Under the pieces are notes generated by a model, which saw nothing but the letters and a program-made list of their open reading frames with translations, was not told the origin of the DNA and searched no databases. Positions 1 through 30,061 of a stretch of 30,061 nt of DNA are shown here, piece by piece. The number at the start of each line of letters is the position of its first letter. Within the stretch, counting starts at the first letter, position 1. The position numbers were made by a program, and so were the translations under genes. The DNA is taken from IMG/VR virus record IMGVR_UViG_3300014914_000026, positions 1-30,061 of that record. The stretch is one strand, 5' to 3'.

Positions 1-123
1 AGCGGATCAGAATGCCTCAAAATACTCGGAGCCATAGACAGAATACTAAGCCTTTTTCCCACAAAGCCATAAGCACCCAACACCAAAAGGCTTAAATACA
101 CCAAACAACACAAAATTTTTTCG
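1..123. repeat. Left inverted terminal repeat (123 bp)
   Basis: Bases 1-123 are the exact reverse complement of 29939-30061; identity ends after ...caaaattttttcg. Confidence 0.97.
83..102 (+). promoter_or_regulatory. Archaeal BRE/TATA promoter inside the left ITR
   Basis: ccaaaaggCTTAAATAcacc with TATA at 92-98, about 37 nt before the ATG at 135; near-identical copy at 18493-18512. Confidence 0.7.
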
Positions 124-134
124 AGGGAAGGGTC

Positions 135-605
135 ATGGAGACGAGTGTGGAGGTAGTAGTTCGAGTGAAGATCAAGGATAAGGTGATGGAGCTTACACTA
201 AGCGAGGCTAAGAAGCTCAGAGATGAGCTATTGAAGATTATACCCCTCGAAGGGGAAAAAATAACCAGAATACCAAGAGCATTTCCAAGAGCGAGTCAAA
301 GTTGTGCTAATAAGCTCTTGGAGGTCATGGAGCCTGACAAGGAATACACGGCTGATGAACTAAAGGAGAAGGTGGGATACTGTAGAAGCGTAGTATATGC
401 TACTTTAAGGATGCTGACAAGCGAAGGTAAGATTAAGATAAGGCGTAAGGGGAATAGATTTTTGTATTCTTTGAGAACCCTTATTTTTTCTCCTGAGCAT
501 AATCTTGATAAGATAGGCTCCATAAATATGGAAGAGATGAGAAGTAAATATGAGGCTCTTAGGAGAGAGAAGGAGAAGGAGAGAATATTGAGGAGGGAGT
601 GGTGA
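135..605 (+). CDS. Winged-helix DNA-binding protein
   Basis: YTADELKEKVGYCRSVVYATLRMLTSEGKIKIRRKGNRFLYSL is an HTH-plus-wing pattern. Confidence 0.75.
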   Translation: METSVEVVVRVKIKDKVMELTLSEAKKLRDELLKIIPLEGEKITRIPRAFPRASQSCANKLLEVMEPDKEYTADELKEKVGYCRSVVYATLRMLTSEGKIKIRRKGNRFLYSLRTLIFSPEHNLDKIGSINMEEMRSKYEALRREKEKERILRREW

Positions 606-606
606 G

Positions 607-825
607 ATGGCTAAGCCTCTGAGGTTTGATGGTAGTGAGCCTGAGTGTTTTGGGTGTTGTGATTTGATGTCTATGGAGGAGTATAAGGCTAAGTGTGAGA
701 AGTGTCCTTATAGAGAGGACTGTGAGAGATGGTCTAATATACTTAGTGGTTCTATGATGCTTAATTTTGATGATGATTATACAGAGGAGGATGATGAATG
801 GTGGGACTGGGATGATGAAATATGA
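607..825 (+). CDS. Small Cys-rich protein with acidic C-terminus
   Basis: CFGCC...CEKC...C motif and D/E/W-rich tail; GGAG/GGTGA RBS; ATGA overlap with the next gene. Confidence 0.7.
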   Translation: MAKPLRFDGSEPECFGCCDLMSMEEYKAKCEKCPYREDCERWSNILSGSMMLNFDDDYTEEDDEWWDWDDEI

Positions 826-1193
826 AGGCTGAAATATATCTCGGTAAGTATCTCAGAGAGAATTGTTTAGGAGCATCTATGGATTTGAATCAGAGCAAGC
901 TGTTTGTTGTTTATCCTTATATAGGTTATTCAACTGATGAAAAAGTCGTGGAAAAAGGAGAAGACTACATAATATTGAGAATCAAAAGTATAGATAGCGT
1001 AGAGCCTGATAAAATTGTTTTAGGTATTGAGGATGATAATTTCTGGCCAGTAATCATTAGACTTAACCAAGATGAGGTTAAGAAGTTAATTAAGGCTTTA
1101 AATGATTGTCTTAAAGCTTTAGAGAAAGGAATAGAAAAATTAGAAGGTCAAATATATGTCAGAATAGGAGATAGTGGAGGTAATAAGGTATGA
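822..1193 (+). CDS. Hypothetical protein
   Basis: 123-aa ORF coupled by ATGA overlaps at both ends. Confidence 0.7.
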   Translation: MKAEIYLGKYLRENCLGASMDLNQSKLFVVYPYIGYSTDEKVVEKGEDYIILRIKSIDSVEPDKIVLGIEDDNFWPVIIRLNQDEVKKLIKALNDCLKALEKGIEKLEGQIYVRIGDSGGNKV

Positions 1194-1729
1194 TTAGAAA
1201 TTTAAAGAAGACTGTAAAGGATAAGTTATCTTCTATTATAATTTTCGTTAGGGGTGAAGAGGAAAAGAAAGGAGAGATTATTTTGAGGAAGGGGACTAAG
1301 ATAACATGCCCAAATTGTAGTGTTGTAATTGCTGTTGCTAAGAGAGATATAAGAAGTGGTGAAACTATTGATTCTGAGAATGTAAAATGGTTAATAAAGC
1401 AATTTAGAAGAGGTGATGAGTTGAGTTGTCCTTTGTGTTCTGCTCCAGTTGGATTAGATTTGGGATTTAAGAGTAAAGAAGGTGAGAAGGTATATGTTGG
1501 GTCTATTATACACACTTCTGAGGGATGGGTTCCAAAGCCTGTTTATGAATTGATGAAGAGTAAGGTTGATTCTGCTGTTAGGAGAAATATAAGAATATCG
1601 AGGAGGCATAGACCTCTTAGTAGTTTTAAGGGTAAGGGTTTGAGAAAGTTGGCAAGTAGAAGTAAGAGGACGAGGGTTTATGAGAGGAGGGCGGGTTTTG
1701 ATTGGAGGAAGAGGATTGAGGAGGATTAG
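1190..1729 (+). CDS. Zn-finger protein with basic C-terminal tail
   Basis: CPNC...CPLC pair; R/K-rich C-terminus. Confidence 0.7.
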   Translation: MIRNLKKTVKDKLSSIIIFVRGEEEKKGEIILRKGTKITCPNCSVVIAVAKRDIRSGETIDSENVKWLIKQFRRGDELSCPLCSAPVGLDLGFKSKEGEKVYVGSIIHTSEGWVPKPVYELMKSKVDSAVRRNIRISRRHRPLSSFKGKGLRKLASRSKRTRVYERRAGFDWRKRIEED

Positions 1730-1730
1730 C

Positions 1731-1807
1731 GGGTCAGTAGCTCAGTCAGGTAGAGCGTCGGGCTTTTAACCCGAAGGGCGGGGGTTCAAATCCCCCCTGA
1801 CCCGCCA
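1731..1807 (+). tRNA. trnK: tRNA-Lys (anticodon UUU), intron-less, CCA encoded
   Basis: Acceptor GGGTCAG/CTGACCC; D arm GCTC/GAGC; anticodon arm TCGGG-CTTTTAA-CCCGA (TTT at 1765-1767); T arm GGGGG-TTCAAAT-CCCCC; discriminator G then CCA. Confidence 0.95.
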
Positions 1808-1818
1808 AGGTGGTGGTA

Positions 1819-1959
1819 ATGGGTTGGGTTATACCCTTTATGTTCTTGAGTTTTGGTTTGTATGGCTTTTTATATGTTGTTTTTAAGTGTCTTTTTTCTC
1901 CTGAGAGTTGTGAGGAGATAGGTAATCATTCTTGGTTTCTTGAGAAGTGTTCTGAATGA
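1819..1959 (+). CDS. Small single-TM membrane protein (46 aa, not in ORF track)
   Basis: Manual translation MGWVIPFMFLSFGLYGFLYVVFKCLFSPESCEEIGNHSWFLEKCSE; GGTGGTGG RBS right after the tRNA; overlaps the convergent 1883-2086 ORF. Confidence 0.45.
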   Translation: MGWVIPFMFLSFGLYGFLYVVFKCLFSPESCEEIGNHSWFLEKCSE

Positions 1960-2086
1960 GGGTCTGCTGTTTTATTGGTTTAGGGTTTTTTATAATGGAG
2001 CCACAGCATATACATTGGTATCCTTTTACATTGTCATAGTATATGAGGGTTCTTGGTTTTTTACATATTGGACAGTAGGCGATCAT
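1883..2086 (-). CDS. Zn-ribbon protein
   Basis: CPIC...CICC; ATGA-coupled to the upstream wHTH gene. Confidence 0.65.
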   Translation of the reverse strand: MIAYCPICKKPRTLIYYDNVKGYQCICCGSIIKNPKPIKQQTLIQNTSQETKNDYLSPHNSQEKKDT

Positions 2087-16155: not shown

Positions 16156-17387
16156 AATCTCATACCCCCATATAGGTTTAGGAGCGTTTGTCTATTTAAA
16201 CCTTGAGCTTCCCAATGGTTGAGCCACCATTCTTTGAATTGATCCTCGGTCATCGTTTTCCAGGCTTTGAATCCCCATCTGTGTCTTTTAGCTCTCCATG
16301 AGATTAATTGTAGAACTGCGTTTTTGTATTGTCTTATCCTTATTGGGTTGGATTCCTCTGGAGGTATTCTTGTTTCAACCCATTTCTCAACTATTCTTCT
16401 TTGTTGATGTAAAAGAGCATATTGATTTGTTCTATCACTTTTGTGAGGGTTTATCATTTCCTCTGGTTTATTATAGTTTGAATATGCGAAGGTTGTTAAT
16501 ATTAGTGAGTTTTTTATTATGTTCATCTTTTCTATTAGTGCTTTTAGGAATGGTGGATTCTTTTTGTCATCGATTAATTTATAGATTGATTTCTTAGGTA
16601 GAAGAAGACCATATCCCAGAGGAGTTACACCGAGAATGAATCCAAATTGTAGATGATCAAGGGTGCTAAATTTGATGTCAAGTATATTTCTCTGAGCATC
16701 CATGAAGGGTATTTTAGCAAGGTCGCCTTCAACATCTGATAGTCTGCTTTTACCTAATACTCCCAAACCAAGAACGAAGGCTTGAGATTGTGCTGAAAAT
16801 AGCATCATTAATCTATTGAATATGTTGTCGTCGGTTACTTCTATCATTTCAAGGTAATCCGCTATTTGCTCCATTGTCTTGATCCAGCTTTCATCTGGTT
16901 TTCTTAAAAGTCTAAGTCTGTGGAAAGTTGCTCTTAGGAATTCTCTTGCCACTATAGGGTCATATAGCCCTCTTGCGTATGGAGTAATACCGTAGATGGC
17001 TTTTTCTCCTCTTCCTATGAGTAAATCTTCTTGGAATTCTTCCTTGAAGTTTTCTATAATGTATTCTTTGAAGTCTGTCATCCACATATACAATCTCTCG
17101 AAGTGTATTGGTTTGAATTTTCCCCATATACCCTGGAGTAATTCATCAAAGTTGGGGAGTTCAAATTCAAAACCAATATTGTATGGTTCATAGTCTATTG
17201 GAAGAATGTTGTAGAGTAGTCCAAGTCCAAGTTGCGATAAGTCAAAGGGTGAAAGATATAACCATACATATTCTGCGAAGTATGGGTCAATGTCAAGTAG
17301 TCTTTGAAAGGTTAGAGAGATAGCACTATCTGATAGAGTTTTGGCGTGATACTTCTTTTTTATGTCTGAAATTCTCCTTTCTCTCAT
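16071..17387 (-). CDS. Putative minor virion protein
   Basis: 438-aa ORF in the capsid/GT operon; repeated G(I/V)TP(Y/L) motifs; role inferred from context only. Confidence 0.5.
   Translation of the reverse strand: MRERRISDIKKKYHAKTLSDSAISLTFQRLLDIDPYFAEYVWLYLSPFDLSQLGLGLLYNILPIDYEPYNIGFEFELPNFDELLQGIWGKFKPIHFERLYMWMTDFKEYIIENFKEEFQEDLLIGRGEKAIYGITPYARGLYDPIVAREFLRATFHRLRLLRKPDESWIKTMEQIADYLEMIEVTDDNIFNRLMMLFSAQSQAFVLGLGVLGKSRLSDVEGDLAKIPFMDAQRNILDIKFSTLDHLQFGFILGVTPLGYGLLLPKKSIYKLIDDKKNPPFLKALIEKMNIIKNSLILTTFAYSNYNKPEEMINPHKSDRTNQYALLHQQRRIVEKWVETRIPPEESNPIRIRQYKNAVLQLISWRAKRHRWGFKAWKTMTEDQFKEWWLNHWEAQGLNRQTLLNLYGGMRLWLQRLQEEKVRLGKRVKLRRLRLALSL
16193..16204 (-). promoter_or_regulatory. BRE/TATA promoter for 15853-16155
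   Basis: AAGGTTTAAATA 38 nt upstream of the ATG; identical 12-mer at 22110-22121. Confidence 0.6.
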
Positions 17388-19587: not shown

Positions 19588-19612
19588 TATGTGGAAGAGG
19601 TATCAGGCAAAG
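19588..19612. repeat. 25-bp inverted-repeat arm in the capsid 3'UTR (partner at 19942-19966)
   Basis: tatgtggaagaggtatcaggcaaag versus reverse complement of ctttgcctgatacttcttccacata: 24/25. Confidence 0.92.
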
Positions 19613-19617
19613 GATGT

Positions 19618-19992
19618 TTAGTATGGCATCACCCAGCCTGCGATGACCTGTATAATCTCATCGCAGACTGAGGGATCGAGGCCATAGGCGTTCACATAGT
19701 AGCTCTTGAGACCAGAGCTGATCTTCTTGCCAGCATCACCCTTCTGGCGGACTATATGCCTCAGAAGGGCGAGGCCGAAGGCGAGGTAGGTCGCCCTCAT
19801 ACCACCAGTAATGCCATACTCATCGAGGATCGGCCTCACCAAGTCCCTGGCGGTGGCAACCATGTTTAGACCTTCCTGTGCTCTATCGACGGCGATGCTC
19901 TGGACATCCGTGAACCTAGTCCCTATGACGGTGGGGTTGAACTTTGCCTGATACTTCTTCCACATATCCAGACCAGTCTTATAGAGTGGCAT
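19618..19992 (-). CDS. Major capsid protein, SIRV2/Adnaviria fold
   Basis: KYQAKFNPTV...ILDEYGITGGMRATYLAFGL...GLKSYYVNAYGLDPSV..II.VI.G aligns by eye with rudivirus MCP (KWQAKF..NPTV...LTQYGITGPNRAIYQGFGL...GLKGYYISAFNANPQV); GGAGGTGA RBS. Confidence 0.92.
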   Translation of the reverse strand: MPLYKTGLDMWKKYQAKFNPTVIGTRFTDVQSIAVDRAQEGLNMVATARDLVRPILDEYGITGGMRATYLAFGLALLRHIVRQKGDAGKKISSGLKSYYVNAYGLDPSVCDEIIQVIAGWVMPY

Positions 19993-22135: not shown

Positions 22136-22981
22136 CTAAAATGAGGGAATTAACTCAATCCACTCTGGCTCCTTATCGATGTAGTCTGGGAGAGCTTTGT
22201 AGAAGTCGAGGAGGGAGCATCCCCACCACCAGTTGTGGAATAGACCCTGATACCAGGGTCTTCCCTGTTTTATGTTGTTTAGGCAGAAGTAAAACCAATG
22301 GGTGGCTACTTGTTCTTTGAATTGCCTTAATGATATGGTTTTTGGGATGTATAACCAATGTGGTTCTGATAGAGCAAGCATGTAGTAATCTTTTGCCAGA
22401 TAGCTTTGGATTCTCTGTCTTGAGCCTTTTATTGGGAATCCTCTTTCTTCGTGATGTTCTATTACCATGATTGGTTTACATTTTTGGATTAGACCGTATG
22501 CTCCATATATGACGTTCTCTTCATGTCCTTCAACATCTATTTTTATTACATGACATTCGTCTATTAGGTCATCTAACCTCCAGACTGGGACTTCTATGGC
22601 TTCTTCTTTTTGGTCTGTTTTTACAAGGTGGCTTTGTGCTCCTTGTTGTATTAGGTAACCTGTTCCTGTGAAGTTTGATACTGCTGTTTCCATTATTTCT
22701 ATGTTTTCAATTTCATTTAGGGCTATGTTTAGTTTTAATACTGCTATGTTTGATGGGTCTGGTTCTATGGCTATGACTTCTTTATAGTATTTTGCCATTC
22801 TAATGGCATACATTCCATCACATGCTCCTACATCTACAAAGATTTTGTTTGGTGAGGCTACTTGTTTTAGTGTTTCTATTACTGTGAGTTCATGCGGTCT
22901 TAGGGGGTCGAGGTCTGAGGGGGTGGGATTATCTGTGGGTATAGCCCATTTAAATCCATCCCAGCTTTTACGGATTTTCAT
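22136..22981 (-). CDS. FkbM-family SAM methyltransferase
   Basis: FVDVGACDG, VIAIEPDP, RLDD, IKIDVEGHE..V..G, IEHH. Confidence 0.9.
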   Translation of the reverse strand: MKIRKSWDGFKWAIPTDNPTPSDLDPLRPHELTVIETLKQVASPNKIFVDVGACDGMYAIRMAKYYKEVIAIEPDPSNIAVLKLNIALNEIENIEIMETAVSNFTGTGYLIQQGAQSHLVKTDQKEEAIEVPVWRLDDLIDECHVIKIDVEGHEENVIYGAYGLIQKCKPIMVIEHHEERGFPIKGSRQRIQSYLAKDYYMLALSEPHWLYIPKTISLRQFKEQVATHWFYFCLNNIKQGRPWYQGLFHNWWWGCSLLDFYKALPDYIDKEPEWIELIPSF

Positions 22982-29929: not shown

Positions 29930-29938
29930 GTCTATCCC

Positions 29939-30061
29939 CGAAAAAATTTTGTGTTGTTTGGTGTATTTAAGCCTTTTGGTGTTGGGTGCTTATGGCTTTG
30001 TGGGAAAAAGGCTTAGTATTCTGTCTATGGCTCCGAGTATTTTGAGGCATTCTGATCCGCT
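29939..30061. repeat. Right inverted terminal repeat (123 bp)
   Basis: Exact reverse complement of 1-123. Confidence 0.97.

What the first reader, a model, noticed from the sequence alone, without database searches (positions are those of the whole stretch)
1727..1821. tRNA-Lys(UUU) wedged inside an early mRNA operon of a filamentous virus
Seen: an intact tRNA with encoded CCA begins 1 nt after the stop codon of ORF 1190-1729 and is followed at once by an RBS and ATG, with no promoter of its own, so it must be excised from the polycistron. The leader GC can extend the acceptor stem to 9 bp (GCGGGTCAG/CTGACCCGC). There is no integrase, so it is not an obvious att site. Known: tRNAs are common in tailed viruses but I do not know them as a feature of rudiviruses; tRNA-Lys(UUU) is the target of the bacterial anticodon nucleases PrrC and PARIS/AriB, and phage tRNA variants can rescue infection. 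Inference: counter-defence against an archaeal anticodon nuclease, or supply for AAA codons, with tRNA processing also punctuating the mRNA.
Basis: partly seen in the sequence, partly recalled or inferred. Interest (0 to 1): 0.7.

Follow-up and report, generated by a model that had tools for sequence, protein, structure and literature searches.

The report
Lysine tRNA gene inside a rod-virus operon
A complete 30-kb rod-shaped archaeal virus genome from Guaymas Basin carries one intact lysine tRNA gene squeezed between two protein genes of its left-end operon, which is rare among its relatives but not a first for filamentous archaeal viruses, and it most likely helps the virus read its very frequent AAA codons.

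Summary
ARAGORN and Rfam (78.9 bits, E 5e-16) find one tRNA-Lys(UUU) at 1731-1807 with encoded CCA. It starts 1 nt after the stop of ORF 1190-1729 and ends 11 nt before an SD-led ATG. All 21 stem pairs are Watson-Crick.

The window is a complete linear genome with 126-nt inverted terminal repeats and a rudivirus-type capsid protein. It is deposited as IMG/VR 3300014914_000026 and as QMZE01000005.1, binned in an Archaeoglobales MAG. Two other assemblies reproduce the junctions.

No TATA-like box or T-run separates the tRNA from the promoter in the terminal repeat, so co-transcription followed by excision is the likely route. This is inferred, not shown.

The tRNA is rare: 0 tRNAs in 23 related contigs (387 kb) and in 5 cultured rudiviruses. 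It is not unprecedented: lipothrixvirus AFV2, of the same order, carries a tRNA-Lys(CUU).

Codon supply is the best-supported role. AAA is the second most used codon, whereas the capsid gene uses only AAG and G/C-ending codons, which suggests a host that prefers AAG.

Counter-defence has no positive evidence. The anticodon arm is identical to cellular archaeal tRNA-Lys genes, and the host is unknown.

Verdict: a new member of a known kind, of moderate interest.

The parts
1..126 (.). Left inverted terminal repeat; its partner is 29936-30061.
   Evidence: The arms are 126 nt long and 99% complementary. An ENA assembly extends the end by 18 nt.
91..98 (+). TATA-like box CTTAAATA preceded by AAAAGG. 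It is the likely promoter of the left-end operon, and the same element in the right repeat faces inward.
   Evidence: TATA scan; sequence of both ends. That it acts as a promoter is inferred.
135..605 (+). First operon gene, 156 aa, weak winged-helix (TrmB-like) match.
607..825 (+). Second operon gene, 72 aa, Cys-rich, no family match.
   Evidence: Its start follows the previous stop by 1 nt.
822..1193 (+). Third operon gene, 123 aa. Its start overlaps the previous stop by 4 nt.
   Evidence: A homologue lies in L003/L004 in a different gene order.
1190..1729 (+). Fourth operon gene, 179 aa: zinc ribbon (CPNC...CPLC) plus a basic C-terminal tail. Its TAG stop is at 1727-1729.
   Evidence: Only one homologue was found (P0122, 115 aa), and it lacks the tail.
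1729..1730 (+). Leader bases G and C that can pair with G1804-C1805 to extend the acceptor stem to 9 bp.
   Evidence: Fold. Judged to be within chance; not seen at cellular homologues.
1731..1807 (+). tRNA-Lys(UUU) gene. Anticodon 1765-1767, discriminator G1804, encoded CCA 1805-1807.
   Evidence: ARAGORN; Rfam 78.9 bits; 21 of 21 stem pairs Watson-Crick.
1808..1816 (+). Shine-Dalgarno-like AGGTGGTGG, ending 2 nt before the ATG at 1819.
   Evidence: Sequence. The homologous gene in L053 is preceded by GGAGGTGA.
1819..1959 (+). Small gene, 46 aa, with one predicted membrane helix and a conserved ESCEEIG motif. It is the last + strand gene before the convergent - strand genes.
   Evidence: Translation. 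Two full-length homologues, E 2e-5 and 4e-4, with 15 invariant columns.
1867..1897 (+). Three runs of 5-6 T, the first on the + strand after position 489. They are candidate archaeal terminators, and they lie inside the small gene.
   Evidence: That they terminate transcription is inferred.
19618..19992 (-). Major capsid protein gene (context). Its codon bias indicates which codons the host reads best.
   Evidence: PF12193, E 2e-21. AAG 8 against AAA 0, and GC3 0.67 against 0.34.

Best explanation
This is a functional, virus-borne elongator tRNA-Lys(UUU) gene of archaeal type. It was captured into the recombination-prone left terminal region of a rudivirus-like virus of order Ligamenvirales. 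It is probably transcribed as part of the left-end polycistron that starts at the TATA-like box in the terminal repeat. Host RNase P (5' side) and a 3' processing activity would then cut it out, which would also split the message into an upstream four-gene mRNA and a downstream small-gene mRNA. Its most likely benefit is extra decoding capacity for AAA. AAA is the virus's second most frequent codon, and the host appears to favour AAG. Shown here: the gene, its intactness, its context, its rarity in relatives and the codon statistics. Inferred: transcription, processing, charging and the fitness benefit.
For: Intact tRNA. Selection for structure: the closest cellular tRNA found (L028, 87.8% identical) differs at 9 positions. 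Six of these form three fully compensated stem pairs and three lie in variable loop positions; none breaks a pair. No own promoter and no terminator upstream: no TATA-like 8-mer between 1209 and 1866, and no T5+ run between 490 and 1866. The operon genes abut or overlap. The downstream ORF is a real gene with an SD. Codon demand: AAA has 488 codons, 52.5 per 1000, rank 2. It makes up 73.5% of Lys codons in - strand genes. Host preference: the capsid gene uses AAG 8 against AAA 0 (Fisher p = 2e-5 against other - strand genes), with GC3 0.67 against 0.34, CAG 5:0 and CTC 6:0. Accessory, recently acquired gene: 0 tRNAs in 23 related contigs covering 387 kb (Rfam). A relative with homologues of the flanking genes has them in a different order and has no tRNA. 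Another contig has the small-gene homologue directly after an ORF, with no tRNA. Reproducible in independent assemblies.
Against: There are no expression, processing or charging data. The host is unknown, so the mismatch between viral AAA use and the host tRNA pool rests on only 8 Lys codons plus the overall GC3 of one gene. Relatives with equal or higher AAA use (L014 at 53.8 and L009 at 58.2 per 1000; SIRV1 and SIRV2 at 73 per 1000) show no tRNA in the sequence covered (85% and 70% of the L014 and L009 contigs; SIRV1 and SIRV2 genomes complete). The most used codon, ATA, has no viral tRNA. T-runs inside the small gene may end most transcripts soon after the tRNA. The AFV2 precedent carries the CUU isoacceptor although AAG is only its 11th most used codon. 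So codon supply does not obviously explain both cases.
Confidence: 0.5

Rival explanations
1. Counter-defence. The host, or a competing element, carries a nuclease that cuts host tRNA-Lys on infection, as PrrC and PARIS/AriB do in bacteria, and the viral copy replaces or outlasts it.
For: Phage T5 tRNA-Lys neutralises PARIS (PMC11464382), and phage tRNAs evade retron and other effectors (PMC11555353). PrrC targets tRNA-Lys (PMC1484252). The gene lies in the terminal accessory region and would be made from the first transcripts. Two Ligamenvirales viruses acquired Lys tRNAs of different anticodons, apparently independently. For AFV2 the codon-supply explanation is weak.
Against: The 17-nt anticodon stem-loop, which is what T5 alters to escape AriB, is identical to cellular tRNA-Lys(UUU) genes from at least two distant archaeal lineages. 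All differences from those genes lie in the acceptor stem, the T stem, the D loop and the variable loop. No host and no host nuclease could be examined. I found no report of a tRNA-Lys-directed defence nuclease in archaea, although that literature was only skimmed.
Confidence: 0.15
2. A recently captured passenger with no selected function: a host tRNA gene picked up by illegitimate recombination in the shuffled terminal region and not yet decayed.
For: It is unique to this genome among 23 related contigs. The neighbouring genes are near-orphans and are shuffled in relatives. There is no promoter of its own.
Against: The exact 74-nt sequence occurs in no other genome of 185,579 species representatives; the only hit is this contig itself. 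The best cellular match found is only 87.8% identical, yet all 21 pairs and all conserved tertiary positions are intact, with three compensated pairs. That fits divergence under constraint better than a fresh copy or a decaying one. An unsampled donor with exactly this sequence cannot be excluded.
Confidence: 0.2
3. The tRNA acts mainly as an RNA-processing signal. Cleavage by RNase P and RNase Z punctuates the polycistron, fixing the 3' end of the upstream mRNA 1 nt after its stop and freeing the small-gene mRNA, as in tRNA-punctuated mitochondrial transcripts.
For: The packing is extremely tight, with 1 nt on the 5' side and an SD directly on the 3' side. There is no promoter or terminator in between.
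Against: A tRNA-like fold would be enough for processing. Here the anticodon loop, the discriminator and the encoded CCA are all those of a working tRNA-Lys. In another contig the small-gene homologue follows an ORF directly, without any tRNA, so punctuation is not needed for that gene. Punctuation is better seen as a side effect.
Confidence: 0.08
4. It is an attachment or recombination site: a target for integration into a host tRNA-Lys gene, or a landing site or decoy for tRNA-targeting integrative elements.
For: Archaeal integrative viruses use tRNA genes as att sites. The 3' 41 nt of the AFV2 tRNA-Lys match, at 95%, the integrase-gene attP region of an Acidianus fusellovirus.
Against: No integrase or recombinase domain is present in any ORF. 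The genome is linear with terminal repeats. The window holds a full-length tRNA rather than a 3' fragment, and neither half occurs a second time. No cellular tRNA with this acceptor stem was found.
Confidence: 0.04

Closest known systems
tRNA-Lys gene of Acidianus filamentous virus 2 (AFV2, Deltalipothrixvirus, Lipothrixviridae; NC_009884 17152-17237; Haring et al. 2005, PMID 15901711)
   Same: It is a single tRNA gene, also for lysine, in a roughly 30-kb linear filamentous archaeal virus of the same order (Ligamenvirales, Adnaviria). It is of archaeal type, and the genome has no integrase.
   Different: In AFV2 the anticodon is CUU, there is a 12-nt intron and no encoded CCA. The gene stands alone on the opposite strand between + strand genes, in mid-genome, with an ATATATAAA box about 25 nt upstream. 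Here the anticodon is UUU, there is no intron, CCA is encoded, no promoter is visible, and the gene is wedged into a terminal operon. The two sequences are not close, so the acquisitions were independent.
tRNA genes of tailed viruses, read as codon-usage compensation (for example haloarchaeal HGTV-1 with 34 tRNA genes, PMC13532342; many bacteriophages)
   Same: A virus-borne tRNA matches a codon that the virus uses heavily and the host seems to disfavour. The viral tRNA has a lower stem G+C than its cellular counterparts (17 against 18-19 G-C pairs of 21), and a similar trend is reported for HGTV-1.
   Different: Those are large head-tailed genomes, often with tRNA clusters. This is a 30-kb rod-shaped virus with one tRNA embedded between protein genes.
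Phage T5 tRNA-Lys that neutralises PARIS/AriB (PMC11464382)
   Same: The same amino acid, with the UUU anticodon here. It is carried by a virus and could be made early.
   Different: The T5 tRNA differs from the host tRNA in the anticodon stem-loop, which is what confers resistance. Here that arm is identical to cellular archaeal versions. No archaeal counterpart of the nuclease is known for this system.
tRNA-mRNA co-transcripts and tRNA punctuation (mitochondrial polycistrons; the bacterial tufB operon; tRNA-like elements in Haloferax mRNAs). Named from my own knowledge, not checked here.
   Same: A tRNA is flanked by co-oriented coding regions with no promoter or terminator between them, so excising it would also cut the mRNA.
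   Different: This is not documented for archaeal viruses as far as I could find, and processing was not shown here.

Membership tests
tRNA (Rfam RF00005), elongator tRNA-Lys(UUU) of archaeal type | Covariance-model score above the curated threshold over the full model. | tested here: met
   78.9 bits against a gathering score of 29, model positions 1-71 of 71. ARAGORN agrees.
tRNA (Rfam RF00005), elongator tRNA-Lys(UUU) of archaeal type | A cloverleaf with all four stems paired and the conserved tertiary nucleotides (U8, A14, G15:C48, G18 G19, U33, T54 T55 C56, A58). | tested here: met
   21 of 21 pairs are Watson-Crick. The conserved positions were read from the sequence and the Rfam alignment.
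tRNA (Rfam RF00005), elongator tRNA-Lys(UUU) of archaeal type | The body matches cellular archaeal tRNA-Lys(UUU) genes, including the G73 discriminator and the TTCAAAT T-loop. | tested here: met
   84-88% identity to tRNA-Lys(UUU) genes of a Njordarchaeales-like contig (L028), a Thermoprotei contig (L032) and L030, with an identical anticodon arm. G73 is present in L028 and L032.
tRNA (Rfam RF00005), elongator tRNA-Lys(UUU) of archaeal type | It is transcribed, processed, modified and charged with lysine. | not testable with these tools
   This needs small-RNA or tRNA sequencing, or in vitro assays.
Ligamenvirales / rudivirus-like viruses (Adnaviria) | A SIRV2-type alpha-helical major capsid protein. 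| tested here: met
   PF12193, E 2.4e-21. It is 32-40% identical to the capsid proteins of cultured Rudiviridae. That level suggests a lineage outside the cultured genera.
Ligamenvirales / rudivirus-like viruses (Adnaviria) | A linear dsDNA genome with inverted terminal repeats and the conserved structural and glycosyltransferase gene block. | tested here: met
   126-nt repeats. The genome has a DUF2341 protein, a 1524-aa protein, two GT4 glycosyltransferases and a methyltransferase. SIRV1 and SIRV2 carry a comparable set: a DUF2341 protein, a large minor structural protein (ORF1070), two glycosyltransferases and a methyltransferase. The same block is found in all related contigs.
Ligamenvirales / rudivirus-like viruses (Adnaviria) | A rod-shaped virion with A-form DNA. 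| not testable with these tools
   The genome comes from a metagenome only.
Anti-defence viral tRNA (T5 tRNA-Lys / PARIS type) | The viral tRNA differs from the host isoacceptor in the region that the nuclease recognises. | tested here: inconclusive
   The anticodon arm is identical to cellular archaeal tRNA-Lys(UUU) genes. The true host tRNA is unknown, and my metagenome search required that arm to match, so hosts with a different arm were not sampled.
Anti-defence viral tRNA (T5 tRNA-Lys / PARIS type) | The host encodes a tRNA-Lys-directed nuclease that infection activates. | not testable with these tools
   The host is not identified. The contig is binned with an Archaeoglobales MAG, while relatives are binned with Ignisphaera, Bathyarchaeia and Archaeoglobales.
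tRNA-derived att site of an integrative element | An integrase or recombinase in the element. | tested here: not met
   A Pfam scan of 40 ORFs found none.
tRNA-derived att site of an integrative element | Only a 3' tRNA fragment is carried, or it is duplicated at the element's borders. | tested here: not met
   The window holds a full-length gene, and neither half occurs again with up to 3 mismatches allowed.
tRNA-punctuated polycistron | The tRNA is flanked by co-oriented genes with no promoter or terminator in between. | tested here: met
   The downstream gene is supported by homologues.
tRNA-punctuated polycistron | Endonucleolytic release of the tRNA creates the mature mRNA ends. | not testable with these tools
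   This needs 5'/3' end mapping.

The most novel reading that the evidence does not exclude
Filamentous archaeal viruses of the order Ligamenvirales have at least twice independently captured a lysine tRNA: AFV2 with CUU and this virus with UUU. The reason would be that some archaeal hosts, or rival mobile elements, deploy a tRNA-Lys-directed anticodon nuclease. The promoterless copy in the first transcript made from the genome end would then be an immediate-early antidote. That would make it the first sign of tRNA-targeting immunity, and of a viral tRNA countermeasure, in archaea.
Probability: 0.12. Interest if true: 0.75.

Novelty: new member of a known kind. Interest (0 to 1): 0.35.

Why it matters
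Virus-encoded tRNAs are almost a hallmark of large tailed viruses, and their function in archaeal viruses has not been studied experimentally (PMC13532342). A single tRNA in a small rod-shaped virus, absent from all sampled relatives, is a clean natural case for asking why a virus keeps one tRNA. The candidate answers are codon supply against a host with opposite codon preference, or protection against tRNA cleavage. That the only other known case in this order is also a lysine tRNA makes the second answer worth a direct test. The operon-embedded, promoterless layout would also be a simple system for studying how RNase P and RNase Z processing of a tRNA shapes archaeal viral mRNAs. Finally, the record shows that a complete viral genome is deposited as part of an Archaeoglobales MAG. 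This matters for anyone who uses that MAG's tRNA set or gene content.

Tried and rejected
1. I spent the only genome-contig scan on the exact 74-nt tRNA, hoping for an identical host gene. It returned only the viral contig itself, deposited in an Archaeoglobales MAG. That gave the provenance but no host tRNA, and it blocked a broader scan.
2. The exact 37-nt anticodon-plus-T-arm found only the window itself in IMG/VR. The 18-nt anticodon arm found only two unrelated large multi-tRNA viral contigs.
3. The metagenome scan required an identical anticodon arm, so it cannot show hosts whose arm differs. This limits the test of the counter-defence idea.
4. Taxonomic naming of the cellular contigs worked for L032 (Thermoprotei) and L028 (Njordarchaeales-like, by PolD). 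It failed for L030.
5. The upstream gene ORF179 is nearly an orphan, so synteny around the tRNA could be compared only with one 2.5-kb contig.
6. The minimum-energy fold of 1720-1825 gave z = -1.09, which is not significant, and it did not return the anticodon arm. A single-sequence fold is a poor tRNA detector, so I relied on the covariance model instead.
7. The sigma-70 promoter scan does not apply to an archaeal virus. I replaced it with a simple TATA-box and T-run scan.
8. I half-remembered a tRNA-Lys in STSV2. The literature search did not confirm it, and the memory turned out to belong to AFV2. The AFV2 paper itself is not in the library.
9. The plasmid search with the tRNA gave only bacterial tRNAs at about 81% identity, which is uninformative.
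10. I rejected the att-site reading (no integrase, full-length gene) and assembly chimerism (three assemblies agree).
Full report
**What is there.**

ARAGORN finds exactly one tRNA in the 30,061-base window: tRNA-Lys, anticodon TTT, at 1731-1807 on the + strand. Rfam's tRNA model matches 1731-1804 over its full length at 78.9 bits, against a gathering score of 29, with E 5.4e-16. It is the only Rfam hit in the window.

The sequence shows the following:
- The TAG stop of ORF 1190-1729 is at 1727-1729.
- C1730 is the only spacer before the tRNA.
- The discriminator is G1804, and CCA is encoded at 1805-1807.
- AGGTGGTGG lies at 1808-1816, and an ATG at 1819 opens a 46-codon ORF.

All 21 stem pairs are Watson-Crick, 17 of them G-C. 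The usual tertiary positions are present: U8, A14, G15:C48, G18 G19, U33, the T-loop TTCAAAT and A58. The finding's coordinates and description are correct.

G1729-C1730 can pair with G1804-C1805, and the minimum-energy fold shows this 9-bp stem. Two extra pairs arise by chance about once in 16, and cellular homologues lack them. I give this no weight.

**What the window is.**

- Terminal repeats: positions 1-126 and 29936-30061 are 99% complementary inverted repeats.
- Capsid protein: ORF 19618-19992 (-) matches the Sulfolobus virus coat protein family PF12193 at E 2e-21. It is 32-40% identical to the capsid proteins of cultured Rudiviridae.
- Other shared genes: a DUF2341 protein, a 1524-aa protein, two GT4 glycosyltransferases and a methyltransferase. 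SIRV1 and SIRV2 carry a comparable set.

So this is a complete linear genome of a rudivirus-like member of Ligamenvirales. It is IMG/VR UViG 3300014914_000026. It is also GenBank QMZE01000005.1, deposited as a scaffold of 'Archaeoglobales archaeon isolate B35_G2' from Guaymas Basin.

Binning is weak evidence for the host. Relatives of this virus sit in MAGs labelled Ignisphaera, Bathyarchaeia and Archaeoglobales.

An ENA assembly (30,097 bp) and a Logan assembly both contain the same tRNA in the same context at 100% identity. The junctions are therefore not an assembly artefact.

**Context of the tRNA.**

A TATA-like CTTAAATA preceded by AAAAGG lies at 91-98 inside the terminal repeat, 37 nt before the first ATG at 135. 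The right repeat carries the same element facing inward.

ORFs 135-605, 607-825, 822-1193 and 1190-1729 abut or overlap by 4 nt. Three observations on the + strand come:
- No TATA-like 8-mer (at least 7 of 8 matches to TTTAWATA) lies between 1209 and 1866.
- The -45..-15 region of the tRNA is 45% A+T, against 74% at the operon promoter.
- No run of five or more T lies between 490 and 1866.

The tRNA is therefore most simply read as part of the left-end polycistron. This is an inference from sequence.

The downstream ORF is probably real. A search of 1.84 billion representative proteins found two full-length small homologues (51 and 46 aa; E 2e-5 and 4e-4). They share 15 invariant columns, including an ESCEE(I/L)G motif.

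Three T5-6 runs at 1867-1897 lie inside that ORF and may end many transcripts shortly after the tRNA. 'Early' rests only on analogy with rudiviruses that start transcription at their termini. That analogy is my own knowledge and was not tested here.

**Is it an att site or a passenger?**

No ORF has an integrase or recombinase domain; 40 ORFs were scanned. Neither half of the tRNA recurs in the window with up to three mismatches allowed. The att-site reading is therefore rejected.

The exact 74-nt sequence occurs in no other genome among 185,579 species representatives. In JGI metagenomes I searched for tRNAs with the same anticodon arm and T-loop. This gave four other hits:
- L028 is a cellular contig with both Lys tRNAs in tandem and CCA encoded. 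Its PolD large subunit is 66% identical to Njordarchaeales.
- L030 is cellular and carries HisRS.
- L032 comes from a 262-kb contig of a Thermoprotei archaeon.
- The fourth hit, L031, is a fragment.

The best match, L028, is 87.8% identical to the viral tRNA. Its 9 differences comprise three fully compensated stem pairs (4:69, 6:67 and 50:64) and three variable loop positions. None breaks a pair.

This pattern fits a tRNA kept under structural constraint. It does not look like a decaying passenger, although an unsampled donor with exactly this sequence cannot be excluded.

**Are tRNAs common in relatives?** No.

The capsid protein has more than 250 homologues at 65-85% identity in metagenomes. 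I fetched 23 related contigs totalling 387 kb. They include near-complete genomes of 26-32 kb, two of them from the same Guaymas sample (tally).

ARAGORN found no tRNA in any of them. Rfam found none in 260 kb of 14 loci. Five cultured rudiviruses (SIRV1, SIRV2, ARV1, SMRV1, MRV1) have none annotated and none by ARAGORN.

Caveat: in several contigs the terminal 1-7 kb were not covered.

Two further contigs show that the neighbourhood is shuffled. The only contig with a homologue of the upstream gene has it followed directly by a homologue of ORF 822-1193. Its gene order therefore differs, and it has no tRNA. A contig with the small-gene homologue has it 3 nt after another ORF, again with no tRNA. 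The tRNA is an insertion into a recombination-prone accessory region.

**Is it unprecedented?** No.

Acidianus filamentous virus 2 (Lipothrixviridae) belongs to the same order. It has an annotated two-piece tRNA-Lys at 17152-17237. ARAGORN reads its anticodon as CTT.

That gene has a 12-nt intron and no encoded CCA. It stands alone on the opposite strand, with an ATATATAAA box about 25 nt upstream. It is not close in sequence to the tRNA here, so the two acquisitions were independent.

The papers I could search on Adnaviria do not discuss tRNA genes. The original AFV2 paper (PMID 15901711) is not in the library.

**What it most likely does.**

*Codon supply has positive support.*
- AAA is the second most used codon: 488 codons, 52.5 per 1000. 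Only ATA is used more.
- Use depends on strand. AAA makes up 73.5% of Lys codons in - strand genes, which include most structural genes, but 37% in + strand genes. The operon that carries the tRNA mostly uses AAG.
- The capsid gene, presumably the most highly expressed, lies on the - strand but uses AAG 8 times and AAA never. Fisher p = 2e-5 against the other - strand genes.
- The capsid gene's GC3 is 0.67 against 0.34, with CAG 5:0 and CTC 6:0.

That pattern is what one expects if the host reads G/C-ending codons best while mutational bias drives the rest of the genome to AAA.

*Weaknesses.*
- The host is unknown.
- Relatives and Sulfolobus rudiviruses with equal or higher AAA use show no tRNA in the sequence covered.
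- AFV2 carries the CUU isoacceptor although AAG is only its 11th most used codon.

**Counter-defence.**

Phage T5 tRNA-Lys escapes PARIS/AriB through changes in the anticodon stem-loop (PMC11464382). Phage tRNAs also evade retron effectors (PMC11555353), and PrrC targets tRNA-Lys (PMC1484252).

Here the 17-nt anticodon arm is identical to cellular genes from distant archaeal lineages. It therefore carries no obvious escape feature.

My metagenome search required that arm to match, and the host is unknown. The idea is untested rather than refuted. The recurrence of lysine in two Ligamenvirales viruses keeps it alive at low probability.

**Processing.**

If the tRNA is co-transcribed, RNase P would leave the upstream mRNA ending at 1730, 1 nt after its stop. 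3' processing would free an RNA that begins at or just before the SD of the small gene. This punctuation is a plausible side effect rather than the main role. The tRNA keeps every feature of a decoding tRNA, and the small-gene homologue elsewhere needs no tRNA.

**Verdict.**

This is a new member of a known kind: a virus-encoded tRNA, with a precedent in a filamentous archaeal virus. Its layout is unusual, being operon-embedded and promoterless with CCA encoded. Interest is moderate.

Noticed in passing
window 19618-19992 (-): The capsid gene has GC3 of 0.67 against 0.34 for the other - strand genes, and it uses only G/C-ending codons for Lys, Gln and Leu. This is a strong expression-linked codon bias that could be used to infer the host's codon preference. 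Several relatives show the same bias (L033 GC3 0.85, L035 0.71).
   Followed up: partly
window, whole length: GC skew is positive in most 1-kb windows on the + strand whichever strand is coding (cumulative skew reaches +4.8, ending at +4.4). As a result, + strand genes use AAG, GAG and AGG while - strand genes use AAA, GAA and AGA. This looks like a replication- or repair-linked strand asymmetry across a linear genome.
   Followed up: partly
window 19588-19612 and 19942-19966: A 25-nt inverted repeat, 96% complementary, brackets most of the capsid gene. One arm lies just downstream of its stop and the other inside its 5' coding part. Its purpose is unknown.
   Followed up: no
L046 (AFV2 NC_009884) 17151-17237; NC_013585 3968-4008: The 3' 41 nt of the AFV2 tRNA-Lys match, at 95%, a stretch inside the integrase gene of Betafusellovirus yellowstonense (host Acidianus brierleyi). 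This is presumably that virus's attP. A filamentous virus thus carries a copy of another virus's integration target.
   Followed up: no
GenBank QMZE01000005.1 = the window: A complete viral genome with terminal repeats is deposited as a scaffold of an Archaeoglobales MAG. A related 21.8-kb viral contig from the same sample (L033) encodes a capsid protein (P0028) that carries an Archaeoglobales MAG label. This is either mis-binning or a hint about the host.
   Followed up: partly
L028 3629-3924: A Njordarchaeales-like cellular contig has tRNA-Lys(CUU) and tRNA-Lys(UUU) in tandem, 141 nt apart, both with encoded CCA and with identical acceptor and T arms.
   Followed up: no
L035 and L036, 1-306 (-): A related 32-kb virus encodes a Csx3-family protein (PF09620) near one end. 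It is a candidate viral ring nuclease or anti-CRISPR.
   Followed up: no
L003 1826-2497 compared with window 822-1572: Homologues of two left-end genes occur in the opposite order in a related contig. The ORF179 homologue there lacks the basic C-terminal tail. This is module shuffling in the terminal region.
   Followed up: partly
window 22136-22981 (-): An FkbM-family methyltransferase with weaker TRM5/TYW2 and tRNA-methyltransferase matches. It is conserved in relatives that lack the tRNA, so it is probably unrelated to it. SIRV1 and SIRV2 carry an annotated tRNA-guanine transglycosylase homologue.
   Followed up: no
window 1883-2086 (-) and 1819-1959 (+): A zinc-ribbon ORF on the - strand overlaps the 3' half of the small + strand gene by 77 nt, in antisense. 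Its low-complexity tail may not be real coding sequence. Alternatively the two convergent transcripts overlap, and - strand read-through would run antisense to the tRNA.
   Followed up: no
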